64,000 nt of DNA, from the NCBI GenBank assembly GCA_001179505.1, contig CDMY01000770.1:203467-267466 (forward strand). The letters run 5' to 3'. This document shows positions 46,311 to 54,903 of the stretch, one piece after another. A model generated the notes under the pieces. It was not told where the DNA came from and ran no database searches. It worked only from the letters and a program-made list of their open reading frames with translations. The translations under genes and the position numbers were made by a program. Source of the stretch: Vitrella brassicaformis CCMP3155 (Eukaryota; Protista; Chromerida). Each line of letters begins with the position of its first letter. Position 1 is the stretch's first letter.

Positions 46311-47045
46311 ATGGAGATGCCATATTCGTCGGCGCGAGCATCCCCAAGATCTCATCGTTTCATTCGGCATTTCTTCCTTCTGCTGTCAGCATCTTGGTCG
46401 CTGTTGCCATCTGCAGCCTTCACACATTCAGGTGGCGTTCTACGCGACAGGAGTTCGCTCTCCATCTCCCGCCGGTGTGATTATTCACGATGCGATGAGT
46501 CAAGGCGGCTCCTCCTGAGGCGGCAGATATCACGACGAGCTGCCCAGGCGGCTCTGTCTGATGATGCAGTTGCAGTGTCGGACACACACCCCCCAGCCAA
46601 GAGGGCCCTGACCGATGTTGATGATCACACGTTCTCGTCTGCAGTTCTGAGCGGCAGCAAGACCGTGGTAAGCTCACGCATAAGAGCCTCCCGTAACCAA
46701 CACACCTCAGTGATTACTGAATGCTGTCACTCAGCTGGTGTTCTTCAGCGCTTCGTGGTTCGAACGAGATGGAAAAATGGACACAGGTTGTGACTGTGTT
46801 GTGTCATCAGGTGCGGGCCGTGTAAGCTTGCCGAGAGTGTGCTGGAAGACCTCAGCGACGAGCTGGCGGGGCAAGTCGATGTGTATCGTGTGTGCATAGA
46901 CAGCAGTCCTGGTGTAGCGATAGAGTACAGGATTAGGAGCATACCCACCTGTGTGCTGTTTCGTGACGGCAAGGCAGTTGACAGGGTGGTCGGCGCTGTG
47001 CCGCGGGCCACCATCATGAAGACTTTGAACGCTTACGTGAATTGA
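46311..47045 (+). CDS. Thioredoxin with a bipartite (signal + transit) leader, probably plastid-targeted; 3 exons
   Basis: Spliced sequence LVFFSASW|CGPCKL (WCGPC split by an intron), IRSIPTCVLFRDGK, VVGAVP. The leader FFLLLSASWSLLPSAAF is followed by a Ser/Arg-rich stretch. Confidence 0.9.
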
Positions 47046-47591
47046 TGTCGATCGAGTGTATCAGAGCCATGATACTAAGTGAACAAGTGCACGACACTAA
47101 CACAAGAAGAAAGCTAGCTGAAGAAGGCAAAACGGGGCGCAAGAAGGCAAGTTCTAGAGCCAGAAATCCTTTTGCACATTCCCTATTGGTGCATGTCCCA
47201 GCCGAGAGCACAGTACAGGAGTCGTTCAGCTGACCATTCTTCCCACNNNNNNNNNNNNNNNNNNNNNNNNNNNNNNNNNNNNNNNNNNNNNNNNNNNNNN
47301 NNNNNNNNNNNNNNNNNNNNNNNNNNNNNNNNNNNNNNNNNNNNNNNNNNNNNNNNNNNNNNNNNNNNNNNNNNNNNNNNNNNNNNNNNNNNNNNNNNNN
47401 NNNNNNNNNNNNNNNNNNNNNNNNNNNNNNNNNNNNNNNNNNNNNNNNNNNNNNNNNNNNNNNNNNNNNNNNNNNNNNNNNNNNNNNNNNNNNNNNNNNN
47501 NNNNNNNNNNNNNNNNNNNNNNNNNNNNNNNNNNNNNNNNNNNNNNCCCCCCATGGTGTTGACATCCCTGTTGTTCGACGGCGCCTTTGTA

Positions 47592-50500
47592 CTAAAGTTT
47601 GTAGGGAGACCGCAAAAGATTAAACTCAGTGTCTTCATCGCAGTTGCTGCAGACAGGCGCACACGACAAGAAAGAGTTGTTGCGAAGGGCCTGCTGCCCA
47701 TGTGTGCGTACATGAGGAGGTATTGGAGCCTCTGTTTCAGCTTCGGCGCGCGTCTCTGGACCTCCTCATAAAACTCCCGGGCTTTGCTGAATGGAATCAA
47801 TAAATCAACTGCTGGCTGGTGTCTCGCTGTCTGTTTCCTCTCTCCTTACCTGACGATGTTCCTGACAATGGGGAAGGGCTGTCCCATGTTCTTGGCGTCA
47901 AAATAGCAAATGGCGCGGACCATGGCAACGGAGAACATGCCTGCTCGTACAGGAACAAGAGCGGTCGTTGGATGCGGCGCATTACTCTGTCTTGTGCTTG
48001 AGATCCGTACCTGACACCGATCCTTCGTATGGAAGCTCCAGTGCTGCCTCATCGTGCCCCAGCCCCGCAGCCCAGAATATCTGTATCTCTGGAGCCGTGG
48101 ACAAGGTAGGCCCGATTGAAGGACTGGAACATGAGAAAAGAGACACGGATAAAAGATGCAGTGGACAAACACGGCTGCTCGCCTCACTTTGTGGCGACGT
48201 TCACAGGTCTGGGGACGAGGTCCATCTCCCTCGGCCTCGTCGCAACTTCCTGGCCTCGCGAATAATCCACAATAGGGCCGAGCCTCTCAAAGCCCTTGTG
48301 GATGAGATGTTGAGGTGAGACACCAGCCTTCGCTTTCGCTCGTGGCGCATCCGTGAGTATCACAGAATTGAACGGTGAGTGGCCGCAGTCGAGAAGGACG
48401 GTCACGCGCGCCTTCTGCTTGATAAGGCTGAGAACCTCGGCCAGATCCTGGAAAGTGATCACATTGTAGCCTGCGACAGAGGCAGGAAAGGTATAGCAGG
48501 AGACGCACATATTTCTACCCACCGCGGGACTGATGACGAGTGCCCGGCGAGCCCCTGCTCTCATCCCCCAGTCGTGATGCCGCCGGTGACGCAGTACCGC
48601 CATCCTTCCATCCCGCTAGCTGCGCATCCCTCCTGGTCATGGGTGTGTCTCCTGCATCCTCAAACTGCTGGTCCCAATCGCACGGCAGCAGACACCCCTG
48701 CAGAGTCGCCGTTCCGCCAATTTGTGGCGTGCGTGACGAGGCGGAGGCTGCCGCCGCAGCGCTGCGCACGGGCAGGAGAGCCCCGGCTCCCGCGAATATG
48801 AAGACAATGTTCTCGTCTGGCTCTGCGCTGCGGGCGAACTCCGTGAGGGTGGCGAGGATGTTGGTACGAGTGGCGAGCCGGCTCTTGATGCCCTCAAGGG
48901 GATTGAAGGACTCTGCACGACATGTGAATAGCATGTGTGTGTCATTTCTTGTATCTGCTTCAGCTGTCATTACCTGGCTCCTCGGCCTCCATGACGTAGC
49001 TGTCTCCGAACAGGGGGCTCCGTTCCTCCTTCTTCCAGTTAGCAGCGGTGTCGATGAGCGTCACCACCTCGCTTTGGACCCACCCGCAAGACAACAGGTA
49101 GTATGACCACACGATGGCGTCAACACAGGCCCCCCTCAGCTTCACACCGCCCCTCGATCGTTGATAGTTGCACCCGACGACGAGCGCCCTTCCTTTCTTC
49201 ATCCCTTTGGGCAGGCGGCTGGCCATGCCCTGCAGGAGGGCTCGCTGGAAGGTGGCGTTAATGTCGATGCGGGCAGGTGACGGGCCGGGGGTGGTGTGCG
49301 CTTCAGCTGGAGACTCCTGAGAGAGAGCATTCTGCAAGAAGAGGAGGATGTACGTGATACAAGGCGGCACTCTATGGCATTGTGTGTACCAGAGCATCCT
49401 CGACCGCTGCCTCGTCTTCCTTGAGCTTCTCAAAATCAGCCTCCGCCTCCGTCGAGCAAAGCTCCATATGTTGTGCGTTCTCGTGCTCCGTTTCGATGAG
49501 GCTGGTGGTAACGAGACACTGGATGTCGAAGTATTCGTGGCCCACAGACTGGAGTGCAACACCCAGACGCTGATATACCGAGGCACGGAGAAAACCGTAG
49601 GGAAGACCATCAAGACAAGGCAAGACAGACATCATCAAAGCAAACACATTTTGTTTACCTCAAGGTCGATTTGTTTCCCTGCTTGCAGTGCTTGCAGCTG
49701 TTCCTTGATGTCGCTGATGGTCTTTTTGCAATTCTCCATGCTCTTGACTGGGAGCTTGTCGGTGTGCTAACAGAGACACGGTACAGACGCTGCTTGGCTG
49801 GCGATTCACCAAAATCCGTGTGAGCCTTACCCTTTGCTGCATGGTCTTTCTCAGGTCCTCCTCTGCCTGCTGGCTCTCCAGTGTGAGATGCTTCTTCCAG
49901 CTCTCGACCCTCTCGTGAAAGGGGTTCCTGATCAGCCAACAACCAGCCGGTCGGCCCGTAGTATAATGTCTCCGCTCGTTTCAATTTGGCCCCTGACATA
50001 CCAGTAGTGGAAGAAGGATGTCTCTGCCTGCTTCAGAAGCCGCACATCATGGTCCGCCTCGACAGTTATGCCTCTGAGTGACTCGATCACACGCCGACAG
50101 CTTGATCGGATGTCGGTCTCATCAATCCTCTGCTGGCCACCGAGATTCGCGTCACACTTTGTCAGCAGCTCTTCAAGCTAAGAAAGGACAGGGCGAGGAG
50201 GATCACGCGTATTAGCTTGCTTGTCATTCTGCGCACCTTATCCTTCGCCTGGGCTTCTCTATGTGTCTCTGCTTGTGTCTCGCCCTTGATTCGGTTTTCT
50301 TCCACATTCAACTCCTCGAGCGCCTTGGCCTCCTGACAGCCAACAACGGCTGTACATGCATTGCTTCATCATTTCCTTTTACCGGGAGCTCACTTTGTCC
50401 TTCTTGCTTTTTAGTCTCTCCTCCAGCTGTCGAGAGGTCATGTCCAGATGGTGTTTCATAGTCAAGTGGGCCTGCTCCTCAGCAGCTTTCTTCTGACGCA

Positions 50501-53500
50501 TCTCGCTCAGGGCTCGCTCAAGCCGCTGACGACCAAAGCTGAAGGCAATGACCACAGAGACTACACGTTTTTCTCGTCGCTGAGAGGCATTGTCGTTCAC
50601 CGGATGTCTTGTGTCTTTCTTTCTGTCTCCTGTATGCCCCTCTGTACGGCCAGCATTTCATCCCTGAGACGGGATTCGTGCGCAGCAAGCGCAGTGGTCT
50701 CCTCGTCAGTCTGCAGCCAATCGTACAGAGGGCACTTCCCGCAATCTCTTGTCGCATTTCACCTTCTTGCTGGCCTCTTCGAGTTGTGTGGAGAGCTCGG
50801 CACCCGCTTCCTGTGCGTGTCGGAGACCCACATTGTCGTGCCAGTGAAAGGATTTCACACTCTGACCTCTTTGCGCTTGATGTCTTCCTTTGCTTGCTGC
50901 AGTGCCTGCTGGGCTGCCTGTATGTTGGCCTCAATGGCCGCCGTCTCGTCACTCATCCTCTCGATCTCCTGCTGTAGTCGGGCCTCCTGTGCGCTGTCCG
51001 CCTGATCCGACACCTGGGACTCCTGCCGACACTGACAGGAATCAGCAGATGACACATCCTTCTTTGGACGTCGGCATCAGTCTCTCTTACTTGATCGATG
51101 AGAGTCTGCAGTTGCTGCACACGTTCCTCCATTGATGCGATCTCGTCTTCCTGGGTCTTGACTTCCCTCTGCATGGACGAGACGTCGGCTCTGTGCTGCT
51201 CGAGCTGCTTCTCAAGGGTCTGTGCCGCGTCCTGCTCCTCCTGAAATTATGAGAGGCACGATCCGTGTGCAGACTGTAATAACACGTCGCTGTTTCACCT
51301 TGACGTGGCCTCGTCTTTCATCGAGCATCTGTCGAAAGTCGTTCTGTTGCTTCTCACGGTCATACAGAGCCTTTCTTTCCCTAGCAAAGGCCCTGAATAA
51401 ACACGCATCCAAAACATCCTGAGGGTCGCCAACCAGACAGGGCGTGTGCAATTGGCGTACTCTTCCATTTGTTGAATGGCCTGTTGCAGCTGGGCCGCCT
51501 CCTGGATGGCTCAAAAAAGCTGTTTATCATACGCCAGAAGACGCGGATGTCACATCAGTGCGTCTCACCTGCTCGCAACTGGCTTGCCGCTGCTGTGAAG
51601 TCGACTGCGTGGCAGCAATCTGGACCACAATCGTACACTCCATTAATTGCTTTGTGTCTCACATCTTTCGTACTTTCTGGTCAGATTCTGACGCCCGTTG
51701 GGCCAGCAACGCAATGCGATCACGCAACTCCTGCACACACGTGTACACCGCATACACTCAATCCCTCAATCGGCGGCATTGGACATTTCACTCACCGCAA
51801 CTTGCTTTTCGTGCAGCGCTCGCGCTTGCTGCTGCTCTTTGACCTCAGATTCACGATGCTGAACAGGGAGACATTAAAGGGACGCAGTGAAGGAGCAAGC
51901 TGGCCGACGGTCTCGGTGCAGTGTGCGCTGTGCTGACCCTGATGTTTGACTGTGTCTGCTCCAGCTCTGCGAGCAACGCTTGCTGGTCGTTCCGGACGAG
52001 AGCAGCCTGATGAATAGAGACACAGCAGCAATCCAAATAGGGTAGAAATGTTTCTGCTCTGCTCACCTCCTCCTCTTGTTTCTTGGCTTGTTCCTCCAGC
52101 AGTTGGGCCTCTCGGTTCCTCTCATCCAGTGCCTGTGTGGTGCGGCTGAGCTCCTGCTCGATCTCCTGGAACCTGCTGCCATCCTCCAGCTGGGCCGACA
52201 TGTCCTTGATGGACTGCTCGAGGGACGACTGCTCCTCCTGCCGGCTCCTCAGCTGCAGCTGGAGGGCCGTTGTGCTGCGCTGATGGTCGTCCCACTGCTG
52301 TTGTCTGTAACGCATGTCTACAAGGAGAGAAGAAGACGGGGAGACACTCTGATGTGTGTCAGTTGAGGCATATCCCACCCATGTGCTGACCGCGGTTGGT
52401 GTCTTCCAATTCTCTTGACTTCTCTTCTTCTTCCTTCTGCACACTGGTTGCCCTCTGCTGAGTATCTGCTATCTCCTCTTGGATGGTCTGCAGCTTCTGA
52501 CGCGTCGACTGCACACCGCAATCAGGTAAATCACAGACAGGTGCATTTCTTGTCTGTTGTGTGTCTCTAACCAGAAGCTGGATCCTATTGGTGGCGGCTG
52601 TGTGTTTGAGGCTGCTGGTCGACTGCCCCAGCTCGTCTTCCTTCTGCTTTCGCTGGTTGTCGAGCTCAGCCATCTTTCTGCACGCACCCACACGCCCTGT
52701 ACGTGATCACTGCTAGAGGATAGAACAAAACGAGTACAGTACCTCTGCGTCGCTGCGATGGACTTTTTTATTTCTTCGCATGCTACCCTTGAATCGTTGT
52801 ACTGCCTCTCAGCCTGCAGCGACACAAGTACCACCAGCAGACCTATGTCAACCTGGGGTCTGCAATGTGCCCACCTCGTCCAGCTGTTCATGCAGCTCGT
52901 CTGCCTCGATTGTCTGCGCGTGGCGGGCCTCGGCATAGCGCACCTCTCCCTCGAGTGTTTGGACCTCGGCCTCAAGCTCACCCAGTTGCTGGTTTCAAAC
53001 ATGTGTGAAGAGAAAATTGTGTGCCTGCCTTCATTTTCCCGTGTCATTGGTGTCCGCTGACTTGATCTTCGTCATCCTCTTCCTTGCGGAGCACGTCAAG
53101 CCGCATCCTGTGGGGAAGCATAGCATGCATCGACGCACACATTTTGTCACGTGCCACCCATGTGCGTGATCCTCACACGACGTTTTGCGCCTTGTCGACG
53201 TTCGGGTCAGCACCCAAGGCGGTAGACGACCGAGACACATCCAGATCTGCACATACAGCATCCAGGGGAGGGAGAGGTCTCATGAAATGACTTCTGAGCC
53301 TGTCATTTCCATTTGCTGACTTGCAATCGCATTCCCGTCTTTGTCCACCTTCATCCACTTGCCGCTCGAACGACCAAGCTGACACACCAGGAAAAAAGGG
53401 GGAAGATAAACGCCGGGAACCACCAATGTCAGGCGCGTGTGTGGACTCACCTCCGTACTGGATTTTGAGACGCCCATAGCGAGCGACTGAATCTCACGGA

Positions 53501-54063
53501 AGATTTTCTAAAATGCAGAAAGCAGGCAGAGGAGGATAAACAGGGTAGCGGTCGATGGAGTGTCCCTCCGTCAGTAGTTTGCCTCTGTGCGCTGTTTGTC
53601 GTCTCGAACGCGCGTCAGCTTCCGCGCCAGCTGAATGCTCTCGCTGGAAATCAGCAAACAAAAAGAACCGGTACCGATACCAATATGATGCCATCGATAT
53701 GAGTGTCATCATGCCCTGTACGCGGATGCGTTTTCCATCTTTTCGAGGTTCGATGCTCGAGTCTTGTCCAGTGCTGTCGCCTCGGCGCGAAGCTCCTCCA
53801 CCTGAGGTGGACACACGACAACCGGGCCATTCGGCACATGTGAAAGATATCCGACTTCACGAGCACCTGTCGGTAGATTTCCATCGGGTCCTCCGACGTC
53901 AGGTCCTCGGTATCTGAAGACAGATACGAGGACACACCTATGGCGTGATGACAAATAAGTGGCCTCATACGTTGAACGCCTGACCAGCAGATGAAGGCCC
54001 AGCGCTCAGTGGCGGAGACACGGGGGCATACATGCCGCCGGTGGGCGGCCGAAGCGGCTCCAT
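47592..54063 (-). CDS. Long coiled-coil protein with a C-terminal metacaspase (peptidase C14B) domain lacking the catalytic His and Cys; many exons
   Basis: GRALVVGCNYQ...LRGACVDA, ATRTNILATL...DENIVFIFAGAG, CLLPCDW, RVTVLLDCGHS and GMFSVAMVRAI are collinear with metacaspase motifs. Upstream exons (about 49400-53800) are heptad-rich in E/Q/K/L. The 5' end is tentative (MEPLRPP at 54063). Confidence 0.75.
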
Positions 54064-54081
54064 ACTGAAGAAACAATGCCA

Positions 54082-54903
54082 TCATATAGATGTGTGTGTA
54101 CAGATAGCCCTTCCATGTCTCCTCACATCAGCTGACCTCCGTCTTTCGGTGCGATCAAATGTGTCCCTCATCGAGGCAACCGATGGAGGCCTCTCCTCAG
54201 CCCGCACGACCGCGACCTCACCCTGCCTTCCAATTGACACCCTCTCTGCCCTCGGGGGGCGGCCATGCGTGAAGCGCTGGCTCTGCAAGAGCGGGTCGGC
54301 TGGCACTGGCGCTGGTGCAGGGACGTGGACAGGCCGTGTTCCAGTACGCTTGAGGATCATGTGCAAACACGGAGCCTGCAACAAGAACGTACACACTCCA
54401 TGCATTGATTGCATGGCTGGCCATCTTTCGAGTACCGCCATGTTAGCCTGGTCAGTGTCGAAGCAATTGACGAAGCGCATGGGTGCGTTGAGGCTGCCTG
54501 CCAACTCACGCGGCTGATAGAGGTTGATCCAGTTGTGCAACTCGACGTCATCATGGGCGTCCAGGTTGTGCAGGGGCACATTGCGGCAGTACAGCAGCGG
54601 TGCTCTGAAGCGCTGCCTCTCGGCGGGCGTCAGGAGAACAGGTCCTGCAATGGGACGACTGAGGTCGGCCAAACACGCCTTGCTATAGACGCCGATTCGG
54701 AGGTACTGCCCCTCCTCTCGTCTGTCAGGGACGATGGCGAAGAACCCTCGCGGGAGTTGGAATATGGCGATGTTTGGGAAGATGACCAGGGAGGGGCAGA
54801 GGATGGCCTGGTCCAAGACATCGAGGCGGAGGCACAAACTGTGGGGGTTTGTGAAGTGGACCTGGTTGTTCACCGTAATCGTCACGGAAGCACTGGCATC
54901 CAT
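54082..54903 (-). CDS. Hypothetical 273-aa ORF; may splice into the downstream coiled-coil/metacaspase gene
   Basis: Long ORF with globular composition. An intron-like stretch gtgagg...cttcag (about 54065-54130) overlaps its end. Confidence 0.55.
   Translation of the reverse strand: MDASASVTITVNNQVHFTNPHSLCLRLDVLDQAILCPSLVIFPNIAIFQLPRGFFAIVPDRREEGQYLRIGVYSKACLADLSRPIAGPVLLTPAERQRFRAPLLYCRNVPLHNLDAHDDVELHNWINLYQPRELAGSLNAPMRFVNCFDTDQANMAVLERWPAMQSMHGVCTFLLQAPCLHMILKRTGTRPVHVPAPAPVPADPLLQSQRFTHGRPPRAERVSIGRQGEVAVVRAEERPPSVASMRDTFDRTERRRSADVRRHGRAICTHTSI

What the first reader, a model, noticed from the sequence alone, without database searches (positions are those of the whole stretch)
47592..54063. 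Long coiled-coil pseudo-metacaspase with both catalytic residues replaced
Seen: the His motif (canonical [YF]SGHG) reads FAGAG, with Ala at 48785-48787. The Cys motif (canonical D[SC]CHSG) reads DCGHSP, with Gly at 48382-48384. The p10 segment (IQIFWAAGLG) also lacks the usual SGC. The rest of the fold motifs and the splice phases look intact, so this is not a decayed gene. It follows several hundred residues of coiled coil. Inactive metacaspases are known in trypanosomes and apicomplexans (established), but I do not recognise this long coiled-coil fusion. Inference: a scaffold or tether that uses a dead caspase fold as an interaction or decoy domain.
Basis: partly seen in the sequence, partly recalled or inferred. 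Interest (0 to 1): 0.7.

Follow-up and report, generated by a model that had tools for sequence, protein, structure and literature searches.

The report
Coiled-coil protein ending in dead metacaspase
An expressed gene of the alga Vitrella brassicaformis encodes a 1626-residue protein with a long coiled-coil rod ending in a metacaspase-type protease domain that has lost both catalytic residues, so it most likely acts as a structural or docking protein and resembles the long metacaspase-domain proteins of the endocytic pore of malaria and Toxoplasma parasites.

Summary
On the minus strand, one 38-exon gene (54903-47592) reproduces exactly the database protein CEM33103.1 / A0A0G4GRD3 of Vitrella brassicaformis (1626 aa, "uncharacterized", no Pfam hit). 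Spliced contigs from two studies join the coiled-coil exons to the C14-like exons, so this is one transcript.

The C-terminal 454 residues have a metacaspase fold (Yca1 Z 14.8; the top 26 Foldseek hits are all metacaspases).

Corrections:
- The "p10" equivalence is not statistically supported.

The only detectable relatives are dinoflagellate proteins of 420-560 aa. They also lack the Cys (Glu/Gln/Asp instead) and nearly all lack the His (Arg instead). Most end in a CaaX box.

Decay, two separate genes and residual activity are all unlikely. The best reading is a non-catalytic tether or scaffold.

Long metacaspase-domain proteins with coiled coil are already known in apicomplexans (TgMCA3/PfMCA2 at the K13 micropore). 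Orthology with them could not be tested here.

The scan noted other pseudo-metacaspases elsewhere in this genome, including a second giant coiled-coil one (s1-197237). I did not check those notes.

The parts
47592..54903 (-). Whole CDS: 38 exons and 37 introns of 52-89 nt (36 GT-AG, 1 GC-AG). Encodes 1626 aa, identical to CEM33103.1 / A0A0G4GRD3.
   Evidence: The exon model translated from the window equals P0001 exactly. P0001 was identified.
54139..54903 (-). N-terminal domain, residues 1-235, beta-rich, fold unresolved (weak C2-like lead). Contains one 60-nt in-frame intron at 54435-54376.
   Evidence: No Pfam, PDB or homologue hit. The single-sequence AF2 model has pLDDT 34 with many strands. 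ESM features point weakly to C2-type families, scores <=0.82.
53986..54138 (-). Pro/Ser/Gly-rich linker, residues 236-262.
49390..53985 (-). Coiled-coil rod, residues 263-1172, exons 3-31. The heptad signal is strongest at about residues 280-1000.
   Evidence: Heptad score 2.68 against 0.85 +/- 0.16 for shuffles. Four Pro, and 40-62% charged or Gln residues. Exon joints are in RNA contigs.
47595..49331 (-). C-terminal metacaspase-fold (clan CD, C14-like) pseudo-protease domain, residues 1173-1626, exons 32-38.
49164..49187 (-). ALVVGCNY, the strand-1 motif (canonical metacaspase: ALLIGINY). Invariant in the relatives that have this part.
49119..49121 (-). Asp1243, equivalent to the S1-pocket residue Asp95 of TbMCA2. 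Retained and invariant in the family.
   Evidence: S1 residues are from PMC4357240.
48782..48796 (-). FAGAG in place of (Y/F)SGHG. Ala1334 (48787-48785) is at the catalytic His position.
48373..48390 (-). DCGHSP in place of D(S/C)CHSG. Gly1451 (48384-48382) is at the catalytic Cys position, Cys1450 is at D+1, and Asp1449 is equivalent to Asp211.
48524..48781 (-). Ala/Ser/Gly-rich, low-confidence segment between the His-motif and Cys-motif strands (residues 1336-1421). It includes LLPCDWD (equivalent to IAPVDF of TbMCA2) and an insert of about 45 residues that is absent from relatives.
48057..48086 (-). IQIFWAAGLG, the candidate p10 strand. Equivalence to the SGC motif is not established.
53508..53582 (-). 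The one GC-AG intron of the gene.
   Evidence: The loose end of contig X6 at 53509 reads on into exon 53583-53643.

Best explanation
This is one expressed gene for a non-catalytic architectural protein.

Shown:
- A beta-rich N-terminal domain of about 235 residues.
- A rod of about 900 residues with strong heptad periodicity.
- A C-terminal domain with the metacaspase version of the caspase/haemoglobinase fold, in which the catalytic His is Ala and the catalytic Cys is Gly.
- Both acidic S1-pocket residues are kept (equivalents of Asp95 and Asp211 of TbMCA2).
- By alignment, the S1 Cys92 and Ser156 and the four aspartates of the Ca2+ site are not kept.

Inferred:
- The coiled coil pairs two chains into a rod of the order of 100 nm.
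- The dead protease domain at one end serves as a docking module that binds partners without cutting them, possibly Arg/Lys-containing peptides.
- The N-terminal domain anchors the other end, possibly to a membrane.
- So the protein acts as a tether or scaffold.

Most specific guess: it is the Vitrella counterpart of the long metacaspase-domain proteins TgMCA3/PfMCA2, which form part of the K13 micropore (endocytic) ring of myzozoans.
For: - One transcript. Run X6 has a 4904-nt spliced contig across the whole laid stretch. Run X1, from another study, has a 1893-nt spliced contig whose shown pieces run from the His-motif exon (48530) into the coiled-coil exons up to 50177. All joints are GT..AG on the minus strand.
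- 4904 = 11 + 4881 (CDS with stop) + 12, which fits the annotated splicing exactly.
- Identity to CEM33103.1.
- Fold.
- Sequence links: exon 32 alone gives metacaspases as 6 of 7 top PDB hits and Peptidase_C14 clusters by ESM features. P0001 versus P0003 gives BLASTP 1e-13. P0003 is above the Pfam PF00656 threshold. The family profile versus TbMCA2 gives 1e-16.
- Dyad replaced, and also replaced in the relatives: Cys position Gly/Gln/Glu/Asp in 15 of 15, His position Ala/Arg in 14 of 15. This argues for an old, maintained loss and against recent decay.
- No sequence differences among DNA and RNA contigs from three studies.
- Coiled coil.
- Literature parallel: TgMCA3 is 2055 aa with coiled coil and forms a ring at the K13 micropore. 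PfMCA2 has a C-terminal MCA domain that is dispensable for blood-stage growth. K13 is present, and micropores are observed, in chrompodellids (PMC10105704; PMC10718435; PMC4717298).
Against: - No direct evidence of binding, localisation or dimerisation.
- The C-terminal half of the domain (residues 280-454 of the domain) and the N-terminal domain are modelled at low confidence.
- A full HMMER scan of 1.84 billion representatives with exon 32 (49331-48975) found no apicomplexan or Chromera protein. Orthology with TgMCA3/PfMCA2 is therefore unsupported by sequence and rests on architecture and lineage only.
- The nearest relatives (dinoflagellate, 420-560 aa) have no coiled coil, so the fusion may be specific to Vitrella.
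- No orthologue is close enough for a dN/dS test.
Confidence: 0.6

Rival explanations
1. It is a regulator or decoy of active metacaspases and not a structural tether. The dead domain would compete for substrates, or be itself a substrate or partner of an active paralogue, as TbMCA4 is processed by TbMCA3 and c-FLIP pairs with caspase-8.
For: Pseudo-metacaspases with such roles are documented (PMC3220528, listed). The acidic S1 residues are kept. c-FLIP appears among the structural neighbours (rank 24). Earlier scan notes list several other metacaspase-like genes in this genome (unchecked).
Against: A rod of about 900 residues and an extra N-terminal domain are not needed for a soluble decoy. 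Metacaspases act as monomers (PMC4357240), so caspase-style heterodimer inhibition has no precedent here. Nothing was tested.
Confidence: 0.15
2. The domain is still a protease and uses non-canonical residues, for example the D+1 Cys1450 with His1452.
For: Cys1450 lies next to the canonical position and His1452 follows it.
Against: The general base His is Ala. Cys at D+1 is not conserved in relatives (C/A/T). The S1 Cys92 and Ser156 equivalents, and by alignment the Ca2+-site aspartates, are gone. The best PDB sequence match is the inactive C213G mutant of TbMCA2, which carries the same DCGHS string.
Confidence: 0.05
3. It is a decaying gene copy or an annotation chimera of two genes (a coiled-coil gene plus a metacaspase relic).
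For: The protein itself gets no Pfam hit. Long low-complexity inserts lie in the domain.
Against: The ORF stays open through 37 introns. Every intron in the laid stretch is spliced in RNA-type contigs of two studies, including 49332-49389, which joins rod and domain. Relatives share the same substitutions while keeping the core motifs invariant.
Confidence: 0.03

Closest known systems
Toxoplasma MCA3 (TGME49_243298) / Plasmodium MCA2 (PF3D7_1438400), metacaspase-domain proteins of the K13 micropore or cytostome compartment
   Same: All come from a myzozoan lineage. All are very long proteins (2055 and 2020 aa against 1626 aa). PfMCA2 has its metacaspase domain near the C-terminus (1527-1848), and the Toxoplasma proteins have a long N-terminal region. 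TgMCA3 is reported to contain coiled-coil or cytoskeletal motifs and to lack a conserved dyad residue. The PfMCA2 MCA domain is dispensable for blood-stage growth (PMC10105704, PMC10718435, PMC4717298, PMC6657590).
   Different: No sequence link was found here: a HMMER scan with exon 32 found no apicomplexan hit. PfMCA2 is reported to keep the His/Cys dyad. The location of the Vitrella protein is unknown. Orthology was not tested.
Dinoflagellate proteins P0003 and P0005-P0017 (e.g. an unnamed protein of Polarella glacialis), an undescribed pseudo-metacaspase family
   Same: These are the only significant sequence relatives. They share ALVVGCNY and RL.GA..DA..W, the F.F.G.G strand and the D..H motif. 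The catalytic Cys is absent in all and the His is absent in 13 of 14. The Asp95 and Asp211 equivalents are invariant.
   Different: They are 420-560 aa with no coiled coil and no N-terminal domain. The substitutions are Arg and Glu/Gln/Asp, not Ala and Gly. 12 of 14 end in a CaaX-type box, which the Vitrella protein lacks. Identity is only about 23% over the domain and the C-terminal halves do not align significantly.
Trypanosoma brucei MCA4 and MCA1 (pseudopeptidases)
   Same: They have a metacaspase fold with catalytic residues substituted. MCA4 is a proven non-catalytic protein with a biological role (PMC3220528; PMC6657590).
   Different: They are small type I proteins. MCA4 changes only Cys to Ser and is lipidated, released and processed. 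They have no coiled coil and arose in an unrelated lineage.
Cyanobacterial pseudo-orthocaspases (Tyr/Ser variants)
   Same: C14 p20 domains with both dyad residues replaced, conserved across species (PMC5756287; PMC6426788).
   Different: They are prokaryotic, lack p10, carry different substitutions and have different partner domains.

Membership tests
Peptidase family C14, metacaspases (clan CD) | Caspase/haemoglobinase fold (strands 2-1-3-4 with helices 1-3) | tested here: met
   The AF2 core has pLDDT 70-90. VIA gives Yca1 Z 14.8 (rmsd 2.7 over 140 aa), AtMC4 11.6, AtMC9 10.9 and TbMCA2 10.0. The top 26 Foldseek hits are metacaspases.
Peptidase family C14, metacaspases (clan CD) | Catalytic His-Cys dyad after strands 3 and 4 | tested here: not met
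   Ala1334 and Gly1451 occupy the aligned positions.
Peptidase family C14, metacaspases (clan CD) | Sequence match to Pfam PF00656 above the gathering score | tested here: not met
   There is no PF00656 hit for P0001, for its C-terminal 454 aa or for single exons, even at E 1-10. The link is only transitive, through P0003 (30 bits against a cut-off of 21.4) and the family profile.
Peptidase family C14, metacaspases (clan CD) | Acidic S1 pocket (TbMCA2 Cys92, Asp95, Ser156, Asp211) | tested here: inconclusive
   The Asp95 and Asp211 equivalents are kept. Cys92 is replaced by Ala and Ser156 by Ala.
Peptidase family C14, metacaspases (clan CD) | Ca2+ site (Asp173, Asp189, Asp190, Asp220) and p10 part with the SGC motif and two extra strands | tested here: inconclusive
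   By extension of the alignments these positions read Gln, Phe, Gln and Val. That region is modelled with pLDDT about 30, and hhalign finds no significant p10 match.
K13-compartment metacaspase (TgMCA3 / PfMCA2) | Orthology by sequence or tree | not testable with these tools
HMMER with exon 32 found none at E <= 0.001.
K13-compartment metacaspase (TgMCA3 / PfMCA2) | Long protein with a C-terminal metacaspase domain and coiled coil, in a myzozoan | tested here: met
   compared with PMC10105704, PMC10718435 and PMC4717298.
K13-compartment metacaspase (TgMCA3 / PfMCA2) | Localisation to the micropore ring or K13 proxiome | not testable with these tools
   Needs tagging or proximity labelling.
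Dinoflagellate CaaX pseudo-metacaspase family (P0003 group) | Significant similarity with shared core motifs and loss of the catalytic Cys | tested here: met
   E 2.5e-4 in a library of 1.84 billion with one exon. Pairwise BLASTP 1e-13. The family HMM gives 44 bits.
Dinoflagellate CaaX pseudo-metacaspase family (P0003 group) | Size of 420-560 aa and a C-terminal CaaX box | tested here: not met
   The Vitrella protein has 1626 aa and ends in ...SPYKL.

The most novel reading that the evidence does not exclude
Vitrella and dinoflagellates share an old, so far undescribed clade of metacaspase-fold proteins. This clade lost the nucleophile, and almost always the His, before the two lineages split, but kept the two acidic pocket residues. 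The clade would serve as non-cutting peptide-docking modules at membranes or the pellicle. The module is farnesyl-anchored in dinoflagellates and, in Vitrella, mounted on a coiled-coil tether of about 100 nm with a possibly C2-like head. This could be a component of the myzozoan micropore.
Probability: 0.3. Interest if true: 0.6.

Novelty: new variant of a known kind. Interest (0 to 1): 0.45.

Why it matters
Pseudo-proteases are common but rarely understood. The role of the metacaspase-domain protein in the K13 endocytic compartment, which bears on artemisinin susceptibility, is called unclear in the papers that found it.

A free-living, photosynthetic relative of apicomplexans carries a long coiled-coil protein whose metacaspase domain has plainly lost its chemistry. 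This argues that such proteins are built for architecture or docking and not for cutting. It also gives a comparative handle (Vitrella, dinoflagellates, apicomplexans) on which surfaces of the dead domain are conserved.

In addition, it supplies a domain annotation for a protein that public databases list as uncharacterized, and it points to an unremarked prenylated pseudo-metacaspase family in dinoflagellates.

Tried and rejected
- Pfam on single exons and on the whole protein gave no C14 hit.
- PDB phmmer with the His-motif exon and the Cys-motif exon alone gave only chance hits.
- The word search with the C-terminal 454 aa found nothing. With the N-terminal 262 aa it found only the protein itself.
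- P0002, a 3387-aa bacterial repeat protein with E 6.5e-9 in the big search, is a chance 39-residue match counted over identical repeats. Rejected.
- The scan of metagenome contigs returned only one dinoflagellate-type contig of 1685 nt, the length recorded for P0010's contig.
- The single-sequence AF2 model of the N-terminal domain was unusable (pLDDT 34), so I did not fold-search it.
- My first hand-built model for 54903-53867 kept a 60-nt intron and used other donors, giving 1673 aa. I dropped it in favour of the database model, which avoids a Cys/His/Trp-rich out-of-frame-looking stretch and fits the length of the RNA contig exactly.
- Brute-force enumeration of splice models timed out or gave hundreds of thousands of solutions.
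- hhalign of the p10-like part against the dinoflagellate family was not significant.
- No paper mentions the accession.
- The supplements of PMC10105704 hold no chrompodellid orthologue table.
Full report
**What is there**

The window is eukaryotic, at about 57% GC, with many short introns and four 300-N gaps. An earlier scan note named the organism as Vitrella brassicaformis. I confirmed this: the protein encoded here is, letter for letter, CEM33103.1 / UniProt A0A0G4GRD3 of V. brassicaformis CCMP3155, listed as 'unnamed/uncharacterized'.

The gene lies on the minus strand. From the window sequence I built an exon model of 38 exons and 37 introns (52-89 nt, mean 66; 36 GT-AG and one GC-AG). 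Its translation equals that protein (P0001, 1626 aa) exactly. The ATG is at 54903 and the stop is at 47594-47592.

**Transcript evidence**

Public runs hold this DNA. I laid four runs on 47600-53599, with these results:
- Run X2 gives an unspliced genomic contig.
- Run X6 gives a single 4904-nt contig with every intron of the stretch removed. This is 31 joints, all CT..AC on the plus strand and so GT..AG on the gene strand, plus a loose end that reads across the GC-AG intron 53582-53508.
- Run X1, from a different study, gives a 1893-nt spliced contig whose shown pieces run from 48530 up to 50177. It joins the C14-like exons to coiled-coil exons.
- The intron 49332-49389, which separates the last rod exon from the first C14-like exon, is spliced in both X6 and X1.

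The record coordinates of the X6 contig add up to 11 + 4881 + 12 nt. That is the annotated CDS with short flanks, so it also fits the annotated splicing of the 5' exons, which lay outside the laid stretch.

No base differences were seen among the contigs of the three studies. So the coiled-coil and C14-like parts are one mRNA, and the substitutions are not sequencing errors. The refutation condition 'separate transcripts' is not met.

**Method note on the spliced model**

Exons were joined only inside local scripts, to check the reading frame and to compare with P0001. All whole-protein and domain searches used P0001, the database protein that the exon search returned.

**Layout of the protein**

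- Residues 1-235 (54903-54139) form a beta-rich domain.
- Residues 236-262 form a Pro/Ser/Gly linker.
- Residues 263-1172 are the rod.
- Residues 1173-1626 (49331-47595) are the C14-like domain.

The rod has 40-62% charged or Gln residues per 50-residue bin, only four prolines, and a heptad a/d score of 2.68 against 0.85 +/- 0.16 for 200 shuffles. This score is a home-made heuristic, not COILS. At about 0.15 nm per residue, a continuous coiled coil of this size would be of the order of 100 nm. That figure is an inference.

**Is the C-terminal domain a metacaspase relative?**

Pfam does not see it, neither in the exons nor in the whole protein. Weaker signals all point the same way:
- The first C14-like exon alone gives metacaspases as six of the seven top PDB hits (E about 0.5).
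- The same exon gives only Peptidase_C14 clusters by ESM features (0.88).
- The 454-residue domain matches TbMCA2 at E 0.015 in three collinear blocks.

A full HMMER scan of 1.84 billion representatives with that exon found only four proteins:
- the protein itself;
- a bacterial repeat protein that is a chance match multiplied by identical repeats;
- P0003 (553 aa, 44% identity, E 2.5e-4);
- a 120-aa fragment.

P0003 passes the Pfam threshold for PF00656 (30 bits). It brings in 13 dinoflagellate relatives, among them a Polarella glacialis protein and MMETSP transcripts. Further links:
- P0001 versus P0003 gives BLASTP 1e-13 over 165 residues.
- An HMM of the dinoflagellate proteins alone scores 44 bits on P0001 residues 1204-1373.
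- The profile of the joint alignment A1 hits TbMCA2, AtMC9, Yca1 and AtMC4 at E 1e-16 to 1e-12. Dinoflagellate rows dominate that profile.

AlphaFold2 on A1 gives a poor model overall (mean pLDDT 48) but a confident p20 core, with blocks at 70-91. Fold searches with that model agree:
- Against 48,161 PDB representatives the best match is yeast Yca1 (Z 14.8, rmsd 2.7 A over 140 residues). AtMC4, legumain, AtMC9, GSU0716, GPI8, caspases, TbMCA2 and MALT1 follow.
- The first 26 Foldseek hits are all metacaspases.
- The ESM-Atlas neighbours all carry PF00656.

The fold assignment is therefore sound. Metacaspases are the nearest known group.

**Catalytic and pocket residues**

The numbering offset of the TbMCA2 chain is fixed by its own motifs. 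In that alignment:

| TbMCA2 residue | Vitrella residue | Window coordinates |
|---|---|---|
| His158 (catalytic) | Ala1334 | 48787-48785 |
| Cys213 (catalytic) | Gly1451 | 48384-48382 |
| Cys212 | Cys1450 | 48387-48385 |
| Asp211 (S1 pocket) | Asp1449 | 48390-48388 |
| Asp95 (S1 pocket) | Asp1243 | 49121-49119 |
| Cys92 (S1 pocket) | Ala | not mapped |
| Ser156 (S1 pocket) | Ala | 48793-48791 |

The S1 residues are taken from PMC4357240. The best PDB sequence match is the engineered inactive C213G mutant of TbMCA2, which carries the same DCGHS string.

The four aspartates of the allosteric Ca2+ site are Asp173, Asp189, Asp190 and Asp220 (PMC4357240). By extension of the alignments they fall on Gln, Phe, Gln and Val. 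This step is less secure, because it extrapolates a few residues beyond aligned blocks.

In alignment A1:
- The Cys213 position is Gly, Gln, Glu or Asp in all 15 sequences that cover it.
- The His158 position is Ala (Vitrella), Arg (13 sequences) or His (one, P0017).
- The D+1 position is Cys, Ala or Thr.
- The Asp95 and Asp211 equivalents are invariant.
- The Cys92 equivalent is Ala in all.

So the nearest relatives do not retain the dyad, and the D+1 Cys is not a conserved substitute nucleophile. This is the pattern of an old, maintained pseudo-enzyme.

**What is not established**

- The p10 half. Residues 280-454 of the domain have pLDDT about 30, apart from a short strand and a terminal helix. 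The family HMM does not reach there. hhalign finds only 'APEIQIFW' against 'xxEVQAFA' (probability 0.2%). That match lies at the place one would expect for the p10 strand, but it is not evidence.
- The N-terminal domain. There is no Pfam, PDB or homologue hit. The single-sequence AF2 model has pLDDT 34 with many strands. ESM features weakly resemble several C2-type families (NT-C2, C2, Aida_C2, RPGR1_C, DUF1005) at 0.76-0.82, which the tool itself rates as a lead only.

**How it probably works**

Shown: an expressed, intact protein with a long heptad-rich rod between two globular ends, one of which is a metacaspase fold without its His and Cys.

Inferred:
- The rod dimerises.
- The dead domain is a binding module. 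Its two retained acidic pocket residues suggest it may still hold basic side chains.
- The N-terminal domain provides the second attachment.

I rate a non-catalytic scaffold or tether at about 0.6. Other readings:
- Regulator or decoy of active metacaspases: 0.15.
- Residual non-canonical protease: 0.05.
- Decay or a chimera of two genes: 0.03.

**Comparison with what is known**

Inactive metacaspases are documented:
- TbMCA1 and TbMCA4 (PMC3220528, PMC6657590).
- PfMCA3 and PbMCA3 (PMC6657590).
- Two of the three Toxoplasma p20 proteins (PMC4717298).
- Cyanobacterial pseudo-orthocaspases (PMC5756287).

More to the point, Toxoplasma MCA3 (TGME49_243298) is 2055 aa. It is described as containing coiled-coil or cytoskeletal motifs, and it forms a ring with K13, Eps15L and CGAR at the micropore. 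It is orthologous to PfMCA2 (2020 aa, MCA domain at residues 1527-1848), a K13-compartment protein whose MCA domain is dispensable for blood-stage growth (PMC10105704; PMC10718435). The same paper reports that K13 is present, and micropores are observed, in chrompodellids, the group that includes Vitrella.

The architecture found here is thus not without precedent in the lineage. The micropore ring is the most specific functional guess, at about 0.25. It rests on analogy only, since no sequence link to apicomplexan proteins was found and orthology could not be tested.

What seems new:
- Recognition of this unannotated Vitrella protein as a pseudo-metacaspase.
- The complete loss of both dyad residues to small side chains.
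- The link to a dinoflagellate family of pseudo-metacaspases, of which 12 of 14 end in a CaaX-type box.

**Earlier scan notes**

Earlier notes list further metacaspase-like genes on other pieces of this genome. These include a 'giant coiled-coil protein capped by a probable pseudo-metacaspase and a C2-like N-terminus' (s1-197237) and an expressed pseudo-metacaspase of a Cys-less clade (s1-242820). I could not read those loci, so I treat the notes as leads. If s1-197237 is a paralogue, the architecture is duplicated in Vitrella.

**Verdict**

It is a new variant of a known kind, of moderate interest.

Noticed in passing
P0003, P0005-P0017 (proteins); locus L001: A dinoflagellate family (a Polarella glacialis protein, MMETSP and metatranscriptome contigs) of metacaspase-fold proteins, 420-560 aa. 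The His is replaced by Arg (FCGRGT) and the Cys by Glu, Gln or Asp. 12 of 14 end in a CaaX-type box (CxxM or CxxA), which suggests prenylated, membrane-bound pseudo-proteases.
   Followed up: partly
window 53508-53582 (minus strand): The only GC-AG intron among the gene's 37 introns. It is confirmed by the RNA-type contig of run X6. The donor GTCAGC/GTCAGG is used unusually often in this gene.
   Followed up: partly
window 47247-47546: A 300-N assembly gap begins 46 bases after the stop codon. The 3' UTR and polyA site of the gene therefore cannot be read. The RNA contig ends 12 nt after the stop.
   Followed up: no
window 46839-47045 (plus strand): An ORF fragment with a clear thioredoxin domain (PF00085, E 9e-10). 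It is probably an exon of the convergent downstream neighbour.
   Followed up: no
window 54376-54435 and 53914-54136 (minus strand): Two open-frame ways of splicing the 5' part exist. The annotated one removes a 60-nt in-frame intron and uses GTCAGC/GTCAGG donors. An alternative retains 47 more codons. Only the total length of the RNA contig favours the annotated form.
   Followed up: partly
other pieces of the same genome (scan notes s1-197237, s1-242820, s1-212207, s1-239575, s1-199402): The scan lists several more metacaspase-like genes in Vitrella with one or both catalytic residues replaced. One is another giant coiled-coil protein with a C2-like N-terminus. This points to an expanded set of pseudo-metacaspases in this alga.
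   Followed up: no
P0002: A 3387-aa bacterial surface-repeat protein (DUF7507/DUF11/GEVED) scored E 6.5e-9 against a 119-aa eukaryotic exon. The cause is that one weak 39-residue match recurs in identical repeats. This is a reminder that summed repeat scores can look significant.
   Followed up: yes
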